Assembly (NCBI GenBank): GCA_033442325.1
Contig: JAWQFM010000008.1
Span: forward strand, 1,051,194-1,115,193
DNA length: 64,000 nt
Direction of reading: 5' to 3'
Source: Salpingoeca rosetta
Taxonomy: Eukaryota > Protista > Choanoflagellata
The notes under the pieces are model-generated. The model was not told the origin of the DNA, ran no database searches, and worked only from the letters and a program-made list of their open reading frames with translations. Below are positions 38,410-44,802 of the stretch, piece by piece; positions within the stretch are counted from its first letter, which is position 1, and each line of letters starts with the position of its first letter. The position numbers and the translations under genes are program-made.

Positions 38410-38988
38410 TCAGCCGAAGAGGGACCAGTCGTTGATTTGCAAGGTGTCGATGGCTTGTGTGAACACGGCGAGGGCCTGCTCCGGTGCGTTGTAGTGGGCC
38501 ATGCGCTGTGCATCCACGTTGGGCGCGACGGCGCTCTGTTCGCTGATGAAGACGGGGCTGTTGAACGACACGACAATGTCTGCGGAGACGTTGTGTGCGC
38601 GGAAGCACGCCACATGCACGCGCACGCTGTTGGCGCGGTCTGCGCGGTCGCGGTGCTTGCCCACTTGCTGCAGGCCCCACATGACGGTTCGCTGGACGTT
38701 GTTGTCACCCATGACGACCCTCTGCTGCGTCTCAGTCTCCACCTCGGTGGACAGTGCGCCGCCCTCGCTGGCAATGACATCAAAGTGGAAGCGGGCTGCC
38801 TCTGCATCTGGCGCGTCCGGCGGCAGCTCGAGAATCTCGATGATGAAGCTCTGGTCTGTTGAGGCGTCTGCAAACACCTCCTGGTTGTTTGGCACTTGGC
38901 GCACCATGCTGATGTCCATGAACCGTGCCGGCACAGTCATCGACATGGCCCCTCCAAACAGCGGTCGCACCACCGGCTCGTCCCCCAT
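38410..38988 (-). CDS. RANGRF: Ran guanine nucleotide release factor Mog1 (intronless)
   Basis: RPLFGGAMSMTVPARFMDISMVRQVPNNQEVFAD...DQSFIIEILE...AARFHFDVIA...ADIVVSFNSP...LQINDWSLFG* matches the Mog1/PsbP-like family signature. Confidence 0.93.
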   Translation of the reverse strand: MGDEPVVRPLFGGAMSMTVPARFMDISMVRQVPNNQEVFADASTDQSFIIEILELPPDAPDAEAARFHFDVIASEGGALSTEVETETQQRVVMGDNNVQRTVMWGLQQVGKHRDRADRANSVRVHVACFRAHNVSADIVVSFNSPVFISEQSAVAPNVDAQRMAHYNAPEQALAVFTQAIDTLQINDWSLFG

Positions 38989-39505: not shown

Positions 39506-42500
39506 TCACTGGGTGAATGTGGCGAGGGACTTGTCGATGGGCAGGCTCTTGGTTGCCACCCACTGGCAAAACTCGTCAAAGAGGACCTGCCCGCCACCGT
39601 TGGTGTCAATTGCCGCAAACTCGCGCTTCACCTCGTCCGGGCTCAGGTGCATGCCGAGCGCCTTCTGGCCCTGCGCAAACTCCCGCACGTCGATGCGGCG
39701 GTCCTGGCCCTGGTCAATCGCCGTAAACACCGTAAACGTCTTCACAAAGTACAGCAGGTTGCGCAGCAGGGCGGGGAACTCGCCCGGCTCCACCCACGCA
39801 TCGCCATCGCCGTCCTTGAGGGTGGTGTGCTTGTACGCGCGCATCATGGCGGGCTTGTGGTTCAGCACAGGGTAGTTCTCAACCTATCACATCCAGGGCG
39901 GTAGGGGGGGGGAAGGCGGGGGTCGACAGCGTGAGAGACGAAGAGAGAGATAGGGGGGGGGGGAAGCAACAAAGCGGGGAGGGGCACAAGGTGAACATGC
40001 CAAATGAACCCAAAGAAATCACACACACGCACGCACACACACACACACACAACACACACACACACACACAACATGCACACAACAAGCACGTAACCACAAA
40101 CACACACACACACACGAACACAACAAACGCAGACAAGTACACGCAACCACAAACACGCGCACACACGCACGCACACAACATGCACACACACAACAAGCAC
40201 ACATATGAACACAACAAACGCAGACAAGTGCACAGTACGTACGCACCGCCCATTTGTCAATCTCGGCGAGGGAGACGATGCCGTTGCCGTTGTAGTCGAT
40301 GCGACGCCAGACCTTCTTGACAGCGGCGGGTGTGGACAGCAGTTTCTTGAACCGCTCCTCCACAGCATCAAACTTGGCCAGCATGGCGTCCGTGTTGATC
40401 TGCTTCTGCATCTTCTCGTCCTTTCTGCCTGCGCTGGTGCCGCTGCTTGTGCCCACGTTCTTGCTTGCGCGCGTGTACTCTGTCAGCACCTCGCCGTCCA
40501 CGGGGATGGCCTTTCGCGCCACATATGCGCAGAACTCGTCAAACAGGACAATGCCCCCATCGTTCATGTCCATGAGGTCAAATTCTGCACGCGCCTCGGA
40601 GGTGGGGATGCTCAGGCCAATCTCGCCCAGGCCGCGCTTGAACTCGTCAAAGTCGAGGCGCCTGTCGTCGTCCCTGTCAATGTCCTCAAACACGTGGAAG
40701 AGCTTGTTGAAGTAGAAGATGTTTCGGATGAGGGCGGGAAACTCCCGGCGCTCCACCCACGCGTCGCCGTCGCCGTCCTTCAGCGTCGTCTGCTTGTACG
40801 CGCGCATCAGAGCGGGCTTTGAGTTGAGCAGCGGGTACTGTTCCACCTGTTGCGCAGGTTGGCAGGGAAGATGGAAGAAGGCAGAGGGGTGGTGGTGACG
40901 TGGTGGTGGTGGTGGTGAAGGAAGATTGGAGGATGAGGAATGGGTGGTTAGGGATGGGTTGCGGCTGCAATAAAACCTTCTGTAAAACCAGCACACCAAC
41001 ACAACTTCCAACCACACCAGCAGCAGCGAGAGCAGCAAGAGCTACAAGAGCAAGAAACCGCAAGAGAACCAGGACGAGTGTGCGTACCACCCATTTGTCG
41101 ATCTCGGCAAGGGAGCAGATGCCGTTGCCGTTGTAGTCGCAGGAGCGCCATGCGGCCTTGAGCTGCTGCGGATCAGCCATCAGCGCCTTCATCTCCGCCT
41201 CCAGCGCATCAAACTCGCGCGTGTCAATGTCCGCCTTCCTGTCCAGCTTCTTCGGCTGCTTCGACGACGAGGACGATGCGTGTGTCTCCATTGTCTTCGA
41301 GGCCGAGGTGGCGGAAGTCACCACTTCGCCGTCCACGGGGCACGAGTTGCGTGCCACCCAAGAGCACATCTCGTCGAAGAGGACCAGGCCGCCGCCGTTC
41401 TTGTCCATGAGGGCAAACTCCTGCTCCAGCTGCTGCCGGGAGAGCGACAGGCCAAGGTGCTCCGCGCTTTTCAAAAACTCGCCCAGGTCCACGCGCCTGT
41501 CGTCGTCCCTGTCAATCACGTCAAACACGTGGAAGAGCTTGTTGAAGTAGAAGATGTTTCGGATGAGGGCGGGAAACTCCCGGCGCTCCACCCACGCGTC
41601 GCCGTCGCCGTCCTTCAGCGTCGTCTGCTTGTACGCGCGCATCAGAGCGGGCTTGTGGTCAAGGAGCGGGTACCGCTCGACCTGACATGTGCGTGGAGAG
41701 ACAGATGAACAGGGAGTGGGGGAGGGGGGATGTATTGAATGAGTGACATGAGTGACATGAGTGACACGTGGGCTGAATGTTGGCGGTGATGGCGTGTGTG
41801 TGTGTGTGTGCTTGTGTGTGTGTGCTTGTGCGTGTGTGTGTGCTTGTGCGTGTGTGTGTGTGTGCTTGGGTGTGTGCTTGTGTGTGTGTGTGTGTGATAG
41901 CAGCACAGCGACAGCAGCGAGATAATGCAACAAAACGGGAAAGCAAACCCCAAAGCAAGAACAAGAGACACGCGCGAGCGCTCTGAACAGACGCTGACGC
42001 ACCACGAGCTTGTCAATCTCGGCGAGGGAGACGATGCCGTTGTTGTTGAAGTCGAGGGCGCGCCACAGACTGTCCATCTGCCGCTTGTCCTTCACCAGGT
42101 TCTTGAAGTGCGTCTCAAGCTGGTTGAACTTGGACGTGGTGATCTTGCCCACCCCCTTTGTCTTCACAGGCTTCACGGGGCTCACGCCGGCCTTGTGGCC
42201 AGACACAGACTTCCACAGGTCGTAGGAGAGCGGGGTGAACTTCTCTCGCACGCCGCACGCGACATACAGGCACTGGTCCTCCAGCTGGCTTGGGCTCGAA
42301 ACAGGCTTGCCCTCTGCAGTGTACAGCTGGGGACGTGGGGAGTACATATGGGCATGTGTGTGTGTTTGTGTGTGTGTTTGTGTGTGTGTTTGTGTGTGTG
42401 TGTGAGTGTGTGTGTGTGTGAGTTGGAATGGATGGCGGACAACAAAAACTAACGTTGTGGTCAGCACGAATGAGATCGAACAAAAGAGGCGTGCACATCG

Positions 42501-42873
42501 TGTCAGTCAGTGCGTGTGCTACGTACCTTGCTGACGCGCTTGCCGGACGGAAGGACCAGGCGCTGGTTCACGAGCTCTACAACCTGGTGGTGCAAAAGGG
42601 GTGGGCGTGAGTGGCAAGTCGGGGACTGACAGCATGGACAACCCCAACCCCCACCACAACACAACATAACAGGACAATTCGCACCACCCTCCTCCCCCCC
42701 CTTTCCCCATCCCAAGTCTTGCACCATCATTCCGAGACACGATGCAACCATACGTCGTCAATCGAGGGGCGGCCGCGCTGCGGAATCGGCACGCGCGTCG
42801 GCGCATGCGACTCACCGTTACGCGCAACCCTACACAGTGCGTGTGTGTGATTGTGTGATTGTGAGAGTATCGA

Positions 42874-42935
<62 letters not shown>

Positions 42936-43298
42936 CAAAGATAGCGCTGTTGGGATGCGCGCACAGCACGTGATCAGACAGAGGACGGCGGTGGGTGTGT
43001 CTGTGTGTCTGCATTCGTTTGTGACGTACAGAATCACTTTGCTGCCCGCGGAAACGCCTTTGGTCCGCGACTGTCAAACAAATGTGGACGCATGTCAAAT
43101 GTGGGCACAATTTGTTCGCACAGACACGATTGCACACATGGTCAGAAGGCGCTGTGCAAACAAACGAGGGCCCCTGCGTGTGGACAGACAGACGGACAGG
43201 CAGAGCGAGCGAGAGGGAGGGAGAGAGAGGGAGAGAGAGAGAGAGAGGAGGAGAGAGACAGAGATAGAGAGAGGAGGAGAGAGAGAGAGAGAGAGAGG

Positions 43299-43338
<40 letters not shown>

Positions 43339-44513
43339 GCCAGACAGAGAGACACACAGAGACAGACAGAGGGGGGGGGGCAGGGTATGAATGGAGGTGC
43401 CCACCTTGGTTGGGGTGGCCTTGGCACCAGGGCGTGCATGGCCGGCAGGGAGCTTGTACGGCACAGCCTTGAAGGCCTGTTTTCCCGCAGCAACGTAGTA
43501 CTCGCCTGATGTGTGTGTGTGTGTGTGTGCGGTGACATTGGGGCATTGCGGGCAGTCGAACATACAACATCACGACCCTAACAAAGACCGACTTGTTCAC
43601 ACCTGTCTTGAGTTGTGACGGCTCCTTGATGACGGTGCCATCGATGCTGGACCAAACAACATCACATACCACAGCACAAGTCATGAAAGGGGGTGGTGAG
43701 GACGGGAAAGGTCACAAGCAACACGGCAATGCAAGTAAGGCACACCATTGTGGGGAGGGAACTGCACTCACGCATAGAGGCGGCGGACAGCACCGAAAGG
43801 AGGAGACAGACGATTGGTGATCTGCAGCAAGGAACAAAAACCAGAAGAAGAGCGGTGTGAGAACAAGGAAGGGAGAAGCCAAGTGAACGCAAACACGACG
43901 CAGCAACGGCTAGGAACAGCGTGGCACAGACACGATGATGCAGACGAGGATGCAGACACGAGGATGCAGACGAGGATGCAGACACAAGCATGCAGACAAG
44001 GGTGTGGACAAGCATGCAGACGAGGGTGTGCACAAGCATGCAGACGAGGGTGTGCACAAGCATGCAGACAAGGGTGTGCACAAGCATGCAGACGAGGGTG
44101 TGCACAAGCATGCAAACACACACACACACATGTATGCACGCATACTCCTTCCCTCCATGCACTCACCCTGTCCATCAGCACGGCCATGGTGAGGCCGCGA
44201 GCAGGGACGACAACATTGCCTGGAGGCGTGTTGCGATCGCCATTCCTGGAAATGCACAAGCCACGGCTGGTGATTAGCAACACACACACACACAGCAAAG
44301 CAGGCAGTCGAGAAGCAAGAACACACACACACACACACACACAGCAAAGCAGGCAGTCGAGAAGCAAGAACACACACACACACGCACACACAAACACACA
44401 CAAACATATGTACACAAACACACGCACACACACACACACGCATGCACACTCGCACATACACAACTGTGTGTGCTGCCAACTCACACAAAGACACGGAGCT
44501 TGACGGAGGCCAT
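39506..44513 (-). CDS. Tandem doublecortin (2xDCX) domains fused to three flagellar-calcium-binding-protein (calflagin)-like EF-hand modules
   Basis: DCX1: MASVKLRVFV/NGDRNTPPGNVVVPARGLTMAVLMDR/ITNRLSPPFGAVRRLY/SIDGTVIKEPSQLKTG/EYYVAAGKQAFKAVPY. DCX2: RVARNGESHAPTRVPIP.../VVELVNQRLVLPSGKRVSK/LYTAEGKPVSSPSQLEDQCLYVACGVREKFTPLSY. Three repeats follow: W..[LCI]D[FY]N[NG]NGI[VC]SLAEIDK...KPA[LM]MRAYK.TTLKDGDGDAWVE..EFPAL.RN..YF...F..F..ID...DRR.D..EF...EF..[MI]D.N.GG.VLFDE[FM]C. Confidence 0.87.
43975..44115. repeat. 24-bp intronic minisatellite (CACAAGCATGCAGAC[G/A]AGGGTGTG), about 5-6 copies
   Basis: Head-to-tail near-identical units inside an intron of the DCX gene, with no spacers. Confidence 0.9.
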
Positions 44514-44802
44514 GATGCTGGCAAACGGCAGGGTAGATCGCAGGGGATGCGCTGTATGACGGGGGAGCAGGAGCAAAGAACAATGCAGCCAAACGAATGG
44601 AAAGGTTGGCAGGCACACAAGAAGGTTGGCTGTTGTGAGGGCAGCTCAGAAGAAGGTTCAAGTCAGTCAGTGTGTGTGTGTGTGTGTCGGTGCGCACAAA
44701 CGCAAGTGAAGCAAGTGAGCGAGTGAAGGTTGTCAAGTGGAAAGTGCTGAGTCAGCATTTTCCATCGACACACAAAAACAAACAAGACGAGAGGCGACGA
44801 CG

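What the first reader, a model, noticed from the sequence alone, without database searches (positions are those of the whole stretch)
39506..44513. Doublecortin tandem fused to three calflagin/FCaBP-like EF-hand modules: candidate Ca2+-switched axonemal microtubule binder
Seen in sequence: two DCX domains, reconstructed from small exons, are followed by three ~190-aa modules, each with up to four EF-hand-like loops (e.g. DYNGNGIVSLAE, DRDDDRRLDFDE, DMNDGGIVLFDE). Established: tandem DCX domains bind microtubules, and several are ciliary (DCDC2, RP1). The module layout ('RA[FY]...[DA][FW]VE..EF..L..I..[YF]F.L...FD.ID...D..EF') resembles trypanosomatid flagellar calcium-binding protein. Inference: this is a Ca2+ sensor of up to 12 EF-hands tethered directly to microtubules, possibly controlling flagellar beat. 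I do not recognise this fusion from characterised proteins.
Basis: partly seen in the sequence, partly recalled or inferred. Interest (0 to 1): 0.8.

Follow-up and report, generated by a model that had tools for sequence, protein, structure and literature searches.

The report
Doublecortin microtubule binder fused to calcium sensors
This is a real, expressed 12-exon gene of the choanoflagellate Salpingoeca rosetta that joins two microtubule-binding doublecortin domains to three trypanosome-FCaBP-like four-EF-hand calcium-sensor modules; I found the fusion only in choanoflagellates, nobody has characterised it, and a role in the flagellum is still only inferred.

Summary
A minus-strand gene of 12 exons runs from the ATG at 44513 to the stop at 39506-39508. 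All 11 introns are GT..AG. It encodes 790 aa: a DCX tandem (residues ~5-190) and three ~198-aa modules of four EF-hands each.

The window is Salpingoeca rosetta. The public model XP_004995848.1/EGD82612 ('hypothetical protein, variant') matches my model exactly except for a swapped N-terminus and one missing module.

The fusion is not an annotation artefact. Exon 9 alone encodes both the end of DCX2 and the first EF loop. Complete transcriptome ORFs from Choanoeca perplexa, C. flexa and S. infusionum align end to end at 54-56% identity.

The modules are FCaBP/calflagin-like rather than generic calmodulin-like, by three tests:
- phmmer against solved structures puts 3CS1 and 2LVV first.
- VIA-align gives Z 13.0 and 11.8 over the whole module.
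- Pfam FCaBP_EF-hand is above cut-off in the orthologues.

They lack FCaBP's acylated N-terminus.

Among the 150 closest DCX-tandem relatives in 1.84 billion proteins, only the choanoflagellate cluster carries EF modules.

Support for a ciliary role is weak and indirect. Published RNA-seq shows expression and a modest fall in an RFX mutant. Paralogues fuse the same module to RIIa or CFAP97 domains.

Verdict: a new variant of known kinds, moderately interesting.

The parts
44485..44513 (-). Exon 1: start codon and first strand of DCX1 (MASVKLRVFV)
   Evidence: ATG at 44513, donor GTGAGT. Spliced to exon 2 it gives KLRVFVNGD, matching KLTVYINGD and KIHILINGD in the orthologues.
44167..44245 (-). 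Exon 2: N-terminal part of DCX1
   Evidence: acceptor TTCCAG, donor GTGAGT. tblastn with P0003.
43772..43821 (-). Exon 3: DCX1 (ITNRLSPPFGAVRRLY)
   Evidence: tblastn with P0001 and P0003; splice sites.
43603..43646 (-). Exon 4: DCX1 (IDGTVIKEPSQLKT)
   Evidence: identical to P0002 from residue 14 onward.
43405..43505 (-). Exon 5: end of DCX1 and start of the linker between the two DCX domains
43030..43070 (-). Exon 6: linker and first strand of DCX2 (SKVIL)
42754..42829 (-). Exon 7: DCX2 (VARNGESHAPTRVPIP...)
42527..42583 (-). Exon 8: DCX2 (VVELVNQRLVLPSGKRVSK)
42003..42326 (-). Exon 9: C-terminal part of DCX2, the invariant PLSY..WK motif, a linker, and EF-hand 1 of module 1, all in one uninterrupted exon
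   Evidence: Pfam DCX 4.1e-7 at residues 6-36 of the piece; the DFNNNGIVSLAE loop lies in the same piece. Splice sites.
41088..41681 (-). Exon 10: EF2-EF4 of module 1, a linker, and EF1 of module 2
   Evidence: Pfam EF-hand_7 1.9e-15; local module profile 281 and 286 bits.
40247..40846 (-). Exon 11: EF2-EF4 of module 2, a linker, and EF1 of module 3
   Evidence: Pfam EF-hand_7 2.6e-13.
39506..39883 (-). Exon 12: EF2-EF4 of module 3 and the stop codon (39506-39508)
   Evidence: Pfam EF-hand_7 1.7e-12. AlphaFold2 model of module 3 has pLDDT 84.

Best explanation
Shown: a single S. rosetta gene encodes a 790-aa protein. Its N-terminal DCX tandem is of the type that binds the microtubule lattice in DCX, DCLK and DCDC2. 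Three tandem four-EF-hand modules of the FCaBP/calflagin type follow, and 11 of the 12 loops keep the canonical Ca2+-ligand pattern. The architecture is conserved in at least four choanoflagellate species. The triplication of the module is older than the split of those species. The gene is transcribed.

Inferred: the DCX tandem tethers the protein to microtubules. The three modules act as a local, multivalent Ca2+ sensor. On Ca2+ binding they would change conformation and either recruit or release partners, or alter the hold of the DCX tandem on the lattice. The microtubule anchor replaces the myristoyl/palmitoyl membrane anchor that places trypanosome FCaBP in the flagellum.

Most likely site (weakest step): flagellar or basal-body microtubules.
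For: One gene:
- 12-exon GT..AG model with exact ATG and stop.
- Exon 9 holds both DCX and EF-hand sequence.
- P0002 = XP_004995848.1 matches the model exactly at 14-290 and 291-552.
- Orthologous ORFs P0001, P0003 and P0271 align end to end at 54-56% identity, each with a DCX tandem plus 3 modules.

DCX:
- Pfam 1.4e-19 on P0002 and 1.6e-29 on P0001, two stretches each.
- phmmer against human DCX 4ATU across both repeats gives 5.7e-12, and against the DCDC2 domain 2DNF 3.6e-9.

FCaBP-like modules:
- phmmer top hits are 3CS1 at 1.7e-9 and 2LVV at 5e-8, against calmodulin at about 1e-3.
- VIA-align gives 3CS1 Z 13.0 and 2LVV Z 11.8, each over 163 residues. The best other whole-module match is Z 10.2 at rmsd 7.9; some single EF-pair matches of ~70 residues reach Z 10.6-10.7.
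- PF22592 scores 36.8 bits against a cut-off of 27 in P0001.

Loops.

Triplication older than the species.

Expression and RFX dependence:
- EGD82612 has log2FC -0.81, FDR 5e-6, in the cRFXa mutant.
- EGD82611 is at TPM ~30-47.

Ciliary context:
- Paralogues fuse the same modules to Hmw_CFAP97 (P0032) and RIIa (P0046).
- Both also fall in the RFX mutant, and P0032 has an RFX motif at -32.
Against: - There is no localisation, no Ca2+-binding data and no microtubule-binding data for this protein or any orthologue.
- The RFX effect is smaller than the mean of the down-regulated ciliome genes (-1.34). No RFX motif is listed for this promoter in the preprint's motif file.
- I could not check the S. 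rosetta ciliary proteome.
- Six of the 12 loops lack Gly at position 6. In T. cruzi FCaBP only EF3 and EF4 bind Ca2+ (from my own knowledge of the literature), so the real number of sites may be well under 12.
- PF22592 stays below its cut-off on the S. rosetta protein itself (23.1 bits).
- A profile of the N-terminal half of the module does not pick FCaBP out of solved structures by sequence.
Confidence: 0.6

Rival explanations
1. Same protein and same biochemistry, but it acts on cytoplasmic microtubules rather than the axoneme. Candidates are the cortical array radiating from the basal body, or the spindle. There it would couple Ca2+ transients to cell-shape or microtubule-stability changes.
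For: - DCX-family proteins are mostly cytoplasmic MAPs, and the best solved match over both repeats is neuronal DCX.
- The RFX dependence is weak at -0.81, against -2.9 for two other S. rosetta DCX genes classed as ciliary.
- No RFX motif is listed for this promoter.
Against: - Paralogues carrying the same module have flagellum-typical RIIa and CFAP97 domains.
- The module's solved relatives are flagellar proteins.
- The transcript does fall significantly in the ciliogenesis mutant.
Confidence: 0.27
2. The EF modules do not act as a switch. They would be structural or Ca2+-buffering domains, or constitutive protein-binding domains, so the protein is a scaffold MAP whose behaviour does not depend on Ca2+.
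For: - Half of the loops have Ala or Arg instead of Gly at position 6, and one loop has lost the ligand at position 3.
- Many EF-hand proteins built into axonemal doublets (RIB57, RIB35, EFCAB6, RSP7) also match the profile and are structural components.
Against: - 11 of 12 loops keep Asp1, a ligand at positions 3 and 5, a hydrophobic residue at 8 and Glu12.
- Asp1 and Glu12 of EF1, EF3 and EF4 are invariant in all 16 aligned modules, and the position-3 Asn of EF1 and EF4 as well; for EF2 only Glu12 is invariant.
- That pattern of conservation is what is expected of working sites.
Confidence: 0.1
3. Artefact: two neighbouring genes (a DCX gene and an EF-hand gene) wrongly read as one, or a generic calmodulin-like repeat.
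For: - The only public protein I could retrieve is a 'variant' with an odd N-terminus and a missing module.
- A profile search against solved structures ranks multi-EF proteins and calmodulin beside FCaBP.
Against: - Exon 9 is one open exon that holds both domain types.
- Three orthologous complete transcript ORFs have the same architecture.
- There is no room for another gene: Mog1 starts 517 bp downstream of the stop, and a plus-strand ORF starts ~220 bp upstream of the ATG.
- FCaBP and Tb24 come first by single-sequence search and by fold.
Confidence: 0.03

Closest known systems
Doublecortin-family microtubule-associated proteins (DCX, DCLK1, DCDC2, RP1; Pfam PF03607)
   Same: - N-terminal tandem of two DCX repeats with a short basic, Pro-rich linker.
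- Aligns across both repeats to human DCX (4ATU, 5.7e-12) and to a DCDC2 domain (2DNF, 3.6e-9).
- Other S. rosetta DCX genes are reported to align best with ciliary DCDC2 and to depend on RFX (preprint 10.1101/2022.11.11.515474).
   Different: - The C-terminal part is not a kinase, a Ser/Pro-rich tail or a WD/EMAP domain. It is three four-EF-hand modules.
- None of the 149 other closest DCX-tandem cluster representatives in the exhaustive search carries an EF-hand pair.
Trypanosomatid flagellar calcium-binding protein / calflagins (T. cruzi FCaBP, PDB 3CS1; T. brucei Tb24, PDB 2LVV; Pfam PF22592 for the N-terminal EF pair)
   Same: - Each ~175-aa module is a compact four-EF-hand unit.
- It shows the same helix pattern as FCaBP's EF2-EF3 region (FCaBP: [29 protein letters not shown]); one search aligns module 1 of the C. 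perplexa orthologue P0001 (DAWVERAEFPALLRNIFIFNKLFTVFDKLD) with it.
- Best solved matches by sequence and by fold over the whole module.
- PF22592 is above its cut-off in the orthologues.
   Different: - There is no N-terminal Met-Gly-x-Cys acylation signal; the protein starts MASVKL and the modules are internal. The membrane 'calcium-acyl switch' mechanism therefore cannot apply.
- The module is present three times in tandem and sits behind a microtubule-binding domain.
- Identity to FCaBP is only about 20%.
Multi-module FCaBP-like EF-hand proteins of other flagellates, and S. rosetta paralogues (PTSG_06715 = P0032, PTSG_00602 = P0046)
   Same: - The same module at 40-50% identity, usually two or three in tandem.
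- Found in dinoflagellates (Symbiodinium, Polykrikos, Gymnodinium, Yihiella, Biecheleria), a raphidophyte (Chattonella) and choanoflagellates.
   Different: - These carry no DCX domain.
- The choanoflagellate paralogues instead carry Hmw_CFAP97 or RIIa at the N-terminus, or nothing (P0005, P0007).
S. rosetta EGD79006, annotated 'Doublecortin, EF-hand, DCDC2 / cilium' in the supplement of preprint 10.1101/2022.11.11.515474
   Same: The same species and the same pair of domain types by the authors' manual annotation. It is RFX-dependent (log2FC -2.91).
   Different: - It is a different gene elsewhere in the genome, and I could not fetch its sequence.
- It did not appear among the 120 listed module relatives.
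- None of the 150 closest DCX relatives other than this family's own representative has an EF pair, so it is not among them as an EF-carrying protein. Its DCX and EF parts are probably of other subtypes.

Membership tests
Doublecortin (DCX) tandem MAP family | Two DCX (ubiquitin-like) repeats in tandem near the N-terminus, matching Pfam PF03607 above its cut-off | tested here: met
   - P0002 (window-encoded): 70.4 bits against a cut-off of 22, two stretches.
- Orthologues: 102 bits.
- Alignment to 4ATU covers both repeats.
Doublecortin (DCX) tandem MAP family | Binds and stabilises microtubules | not testable with these tools
   Needs co-sedimentation or imaging. Only the conserved domain signature was seen.
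FCaBP / calflagin family | Compact four-EF-hand fold of ~190 aa with FCaBP as the nearest solved structure | tested here: met
   - AlphaFold2 model of module 3 has pLDDT 84.
- VIA-align: 3CS1 Z 13.0 and 2LVV Z 11.8, 163 residues each. The next whole-module match is Z 10.2.
- phmmer: 3CS1 at 1.7e-9 is the top hit.
FCaBP / calflagin family | N-terminal EF pair matches Pfam FCaBP_EF-hand (PF22592) above the gathering score of 27 bits | tested here: inconclusive
   - Orthologues pass: P0001 36.8 bits, P0004 35.3 bits.
- The related three-module, DCX-less protein P0005 also passes (35.5 bits).
- The S. rosetta product P0002 reaches only 23.1 bits.
- A profile of the N-terminal halves does not single out FCaBP among solved structures.
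FCaBP / calflagin family | N-terminal myristoylation and palmitoylation signal (Gly2, Cys) that anchors the protein to the flagellar membrane | tested here: not met
   The protein begins MASVKLRV, and the modules start at residues ~220, ~420 and ~620. It should therefore not be filed as a calflagin; it has calflagin-like modules.
FCaBP / calflagin family | Ca2+ binding by EF3 and EF4 | not testable with these tools
   - EF4 loops are canonical in all three modules.
- EF3 loops keep the ligands in modules 1 and 2 but not in module 3.
- No binding data exist.
Calmodulin-like generic EF-hand proteins | Calmodulin or troponin-C type proteins are the best match over the whole unit | tested here: not met
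   - Calmodulins score about 1e-3 against 1.7e-9 for FCaBP in the single-sequence search.
- They align only over one EF pair, or at rmsd above 7 A, in the fold comparison.
- A profile search does rank them near FCaBP, because of repeated EF-pair hits.

The most novel reading that the evidence does not exclude
The protein is an axonemal or ciliary-tip microtubule-lattice Ca2+ sensor specific to choanoflagellates. Ca2+ entering the flagellum would be read directly on the doublet surface by up to a dozen EF-hands, changing microtubule binding or partner recruitment and thereby flagellar waveform or length. The fusion would then be 'Rosetta-stone' evidence that DCDC2-type ciliary MAPs and FCaBP-type flagellar Ca2+ sensors work in one pathway, in the closest living relatives of animals.
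Probability: 0.2. Interest if true: 0.65.

Novelty: new variant of a known kind. Interest (0 to 1): 0.45.

Why it matters
How Ca2+ changes the beat and length of cilia is only partly understood. The known sensors sit on dyneins, radial spokes or the membrane: calaxin, LC4, calmodulin and, in trypanosomes, acylated FCaBP.

A sensor bolted straight onto the microtubule lattice through a DCX tandem would be a different solution. S. rosetta has CRISPR, tagging and flagellar cryo-ET, so the idea can be tested directly.

The locus also shows that the FCaBP-type module is not a trypanosome peculiarity. It is a widespread cassette of flagellates, which choanoflagellates have attached to three different cytoskeleton- or flagellum-related anchoring domains (DCX, RIIa, CFAP97).

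If the function turns out to be cytoplasmic, or independent of Ca2+, this is simply one more lineage-specific domain shuffle.

Tried and rejected
- **Word-based survey for other DCX-EF fusions.** The search with the DCX region of P0001 found only P0001 itself and P0004. It missed even known orthologues, so I discarded it as a survey and replaced it with the exhaustive HMMER search.
- **Foldseek alone.** It did not separate FCaBP from other four-EF proteins (TM 0.3-0.49). VIA-align did.
- **Profile searches against solved structures.** These are dominated by generic EF pairs and do not discriminate.
- **ESM Atlas.** It gave only leads below 0.9.
- **S. rosetta ciliary proteome (Sigg et al. 2017).** The preprint has no held supplement and the journal version is not held.
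- **EGD79006.** Its sequence could not be fetched with the tools and caps left.
- **Literature by accession.** Nothing found.
- **Rfam.** No RNA family in or around the gene.
- **Two-gene reading.** Considered and rejected; see the rival explanations.
- **RFX half-site at 44729.** Considered as evidence of RFX control and rejected. There are 16 such heptamers in the window, and the preprint's motif table does not list this gene.


Full report
**What is there**

The region 39506-44513 lies on the minus strand of a eukaryotic genome with short exons and introns full of (CA)n runs. Stop-free pieces translated from that strand carry Pfam EF-hand pairs (EF-hand_7, 2e-12 to 2e-15). One piece also carries the C-terminal half of a DCX domain (4e-7).

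I read the splice sites by eye and checked them against orthologues. This gave a 12-exon model in which every intron is GT..AG.

The product is 790 aa:
- DCX1 at about residues 5-85.
- A basic, Pro-rich linker.
- DCX2 at about residues 112-190.
- An invariant PLSY..WK motif.
- Three modules at 223-397, 421-595 and 621-788.

All three introns between modules fall at the same place and phase (…EIDK[LW][VA] | VE.YP.L), as expected of an internal triplication.

**Whose gene it is**

The public protein P0002 is XP_004995848.1 / EGD82612.1 / UniProt F2U4P6, named 'hypothetical protein, variant [Salpingoeca rosetta]' (UniRef name 'Calmodulin'). It is letter-for-letter identical to my model at residues 14-290 (model 54-330) and at 291-552 (model 529-790). 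The window is therefore this S. rosetta locus.

The variant differs from my model in two ways:
- It starts at a Met inside intron 3, so it lacks most of DCX1.
- It skips exactly one module period (198 aa). The jump lies inside a 24-nt stretch that is identical in exons 10 and 11 and offers no GT..AG pair. I take this as an alternative or artefactual model, not the main product.

**One gene, not two**

- Exon 9 (42003-42326) is a single open exon that encodes the end of DCX2, the linker and the first EF loop of module 1.
- Complete ORFs from independent transcriptomes align with the 790-aa model from end to end at 54-56% identity. They are Choanoeca perplexa (P0001, 771 aa), C. flexa (P0271, 765 aa) and Salpingoeca infusionum (P0003, 792 aa). 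Each has a DCX tandem plus three modules.
- In a maximum-likelihood tree of modules, the first modules of the four species form one clade (98/94). The second modules form another (93/94). The third modules fall into two species pairs. The triplication is therefore older than these species.
- The gene is boxed in. A Mog1 gene (Pfam 3.6e-42) starts at 38988 on the same strand. A plus-strand ORF starts at about 44737. No Rfam family lies in or around the gene.

**What the parts are**

*DCX.* The DCX tandem matches Pfam well above its cut-off. It aligns over both repeats with human doublecortin (4ATU, 5.7e-12). Its second repeat matches a DCDC2 domain (2DNF, 3.6e-9).

*Modules, by sequence.* A single-sequence search of solved structures puts T. 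cruzi FCaBP (3CS1, 1.7e-9) and T. brucei Tb24 (2LVV, 5e-8) first. They come ahead of the axonemal EF proteins RSP7, RIB57 and RIB35, and far ahead of calmodulin (about 1e-3).

*Modules, by fold.* An AlphaFold2 model of the window's third module (pLDDT 84, four helix-loop-helix units) is closest to the same two structures over its whole length. VIA-align gives Z 13.0 and 11.8 with 163 residues aligned each. Other four-EF proteins reach at most Z 10.2 with rmsd near 8 A; some single EF-pair matches of about 70 residues reach Z 10.6-10.7.

*Modules, by Pfam.* The FCaBP_EF-hand model passes its cut-off in the orthologues (about 36 bits against 27). It does not pass on the S. rosetta variant (23 bits).

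*Weaker tests.* Foldseek alone and profile searches do not discriminate, because any EF pair matches.

*Loops.* Eleven of the 12 loops keep Asp1, a ligand at positions 3 and 5, a hydrophobic residue at 8 and Glu12. Six have Gly6.

*What is missing.* The feature that defines how FCaBP works, its acylated N-terminus, is absent. These are FCaBP-like modules, not a calflagin.

**Distribution**

*The fusion.* An exhaustive HMMER search of 1.84 billion cluster representatives with a profile of the DCX tandem gave 1022 hits. The best is the choanoflagellate fusion itself (348 bits). The next, a lamprey protein, scores 151 bits. I scanned the other 149 listed hits with the module profile. That profile finds the positive controls (P0001, P0003) and picks up calmodulin-type EF pairs in solved structures. 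None of the 149 matched, even at E 10. The fusion thus seems confined to choanoflagellates. Representatives stand for clusters at 50% identity, so species hidden inside the cluster cannot be listed.

*The module alone.* It is widespread as two- or three-module proteins in dinoflagellates, a raphidophyte and choanoflagellates.

*Other anchors in choanoflagellates.* The same module also sits behind an Hmw/CFAP97 domain (P0032 = PTSG_06715, plus orthologues P0030 and P0074) and behind an RIIa domain (P0046 = PTSG_00602).

**Expression and the ciliary question**

The supplementary tables of the preprint 10.1101/2022.11.11.515474 (RFX and ciliogenesis in S. rosetta) give the following:

| Transcript | What it is | Value |
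|---|---|---|
| EGD82612 | this gene, variant model | logCPM 5.2; log2FC -0.81, FDR 5e-6 in the cRFXa mutant |
| EGD82611 | this gene, sibling model | about 30-47 TPM |
| EGD75057 | CFAP97-module paralogue | log2FC -1.21; RFX motif at -32 |
| EGD75892 | RIIa-module paralogue | log2FC -0.90 |

The same tables annotate another gene, EGD79006, as 'Doublecortin, EF-hand, DCDC2 / cilium' (log2FC -2.91). The text says that several S. rosetta DCX genes resemble ciliary DCDC2. So S. rosetta has a second DCX-EF gene, and the combination has been noticed, though not studied. I could not fetch EGD79006.

The effect on our gene is smaller than the mean for down-regulated ciliome genes (-1.34). No RFX motif is listed for its promoter. 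A lone GTTGTCA at 44729 is not meaningful, since there are 16 in the window. The ciliary proteome tables could not be read.

**Reading**

The architecture is firmly shown. From the established behaviour of DCX tandems (binding the microtubule lattice) and of FCaBP-type four-EF-hand proteins (Ca2+-induced conformational change), the most likely function is a microtubule-tethered, multivalent Ca2+ sensor.

A flagellar site is favoured by the company the module keeps (RIIa, CFAP97, trypanosome flagellar relatives, flagellate-only distribution in my sample) and by the modest RFX dependence. It is not demonstrated, and a cytoplasmic-microtubule role is a serious rival.

I found no paper on this protein or this fusion.

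**Verdict**

Its functional claim is plausible but untested. This is a lineage-restricted new combination of two known domain kinds, with a public but uncharacterised gene model, in a genetically tractable organism. It is moderately interesting and directly testable.

Noticed in passing
window 38413-38988 (-): Single-exon gene for a Ran-binding Mog1 protein (Pfam Mog1 3.6e-42). Its start lies 517 bp downstream of the stop of the DCX-EF gene, which limits that gene's 3' UTR.
   Followed up: partly
window 41490-41534 and 40655-40699 (-), inside exons 10 and 11: The public 'variant' protein XP_004995848.1 skips one whole module (model residues 331-528). The junction lies within a 24-nt stretch identical in both exons and has no GT..AG pair. 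It looks like a template-switch or assembly artefact, or a non-canonical event. The variant also starts at a Met inside intron 3.
   Followed up: partly
window 41854-41908 (intron 9) and most other introns of the gene: Nearly every intron carries long (CA)n/(TG)n or (CT)n microsatellites.
   Followed up: no
elsewhere in the S. rosetta genome (P0032 = PTSG_06715/EGD75057; P0046 = PTSG_00602/EGD75892): Paralogues carry two copies of the same FCaBP-like module behind an Hmw/CFAP97 domain or an RIIa docking domain. Both fall in the cRFXa ciliogenesis mutant (-1.21 and -0.90), and the first has an RFX motif at -32. The module appears to be a cassette hung on several cytoskeletal or flagellar anchors.
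   Followed up: partly
elsewhere in the S. rosetta genome (EGD79006): A preprint's supplement annotates this gene 'Doublecortin, EF-hand, DCDC2 / cilium', with log2FC -2.91 in the RFX mutant. It would be a second DCX-EF-hand gene in this species. Its sequence could not be fetched here.
   Followed up: no
model residues 185-192, window exon 9 (about 42240-42265, -): The motif P-L-S-Y-x-[LV]-W-K just after DCX2 is invariant in the three aligned species (S. rosetta, C. perplexa, S. infusionum), although it lies outside the Pfam DCX model. It could be an extension of DCX2 or a docking segment for the first EF module.
   Followed up: no
window 44729-44735 (+): An RFX half-site-like heptamer GTTGTCA lies in the ~220-bp region between the ATG of this gene and the plus-strand ORF that starts at about 44737. 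There are 16 such heptamers in the window, and the preprint's motif table does not list this gene, so it is probably chance.
   Followed up: partly
ESM Atlas clusters: A rotifer cluster of DCX proteins carries IQ motifs in 97% of members. That would be another way of bringing a Ca2+ sensor (calmodulin) to a DCX-type MAP. This is a lead only, below the tool's reliability threshold.
   Followed up: no
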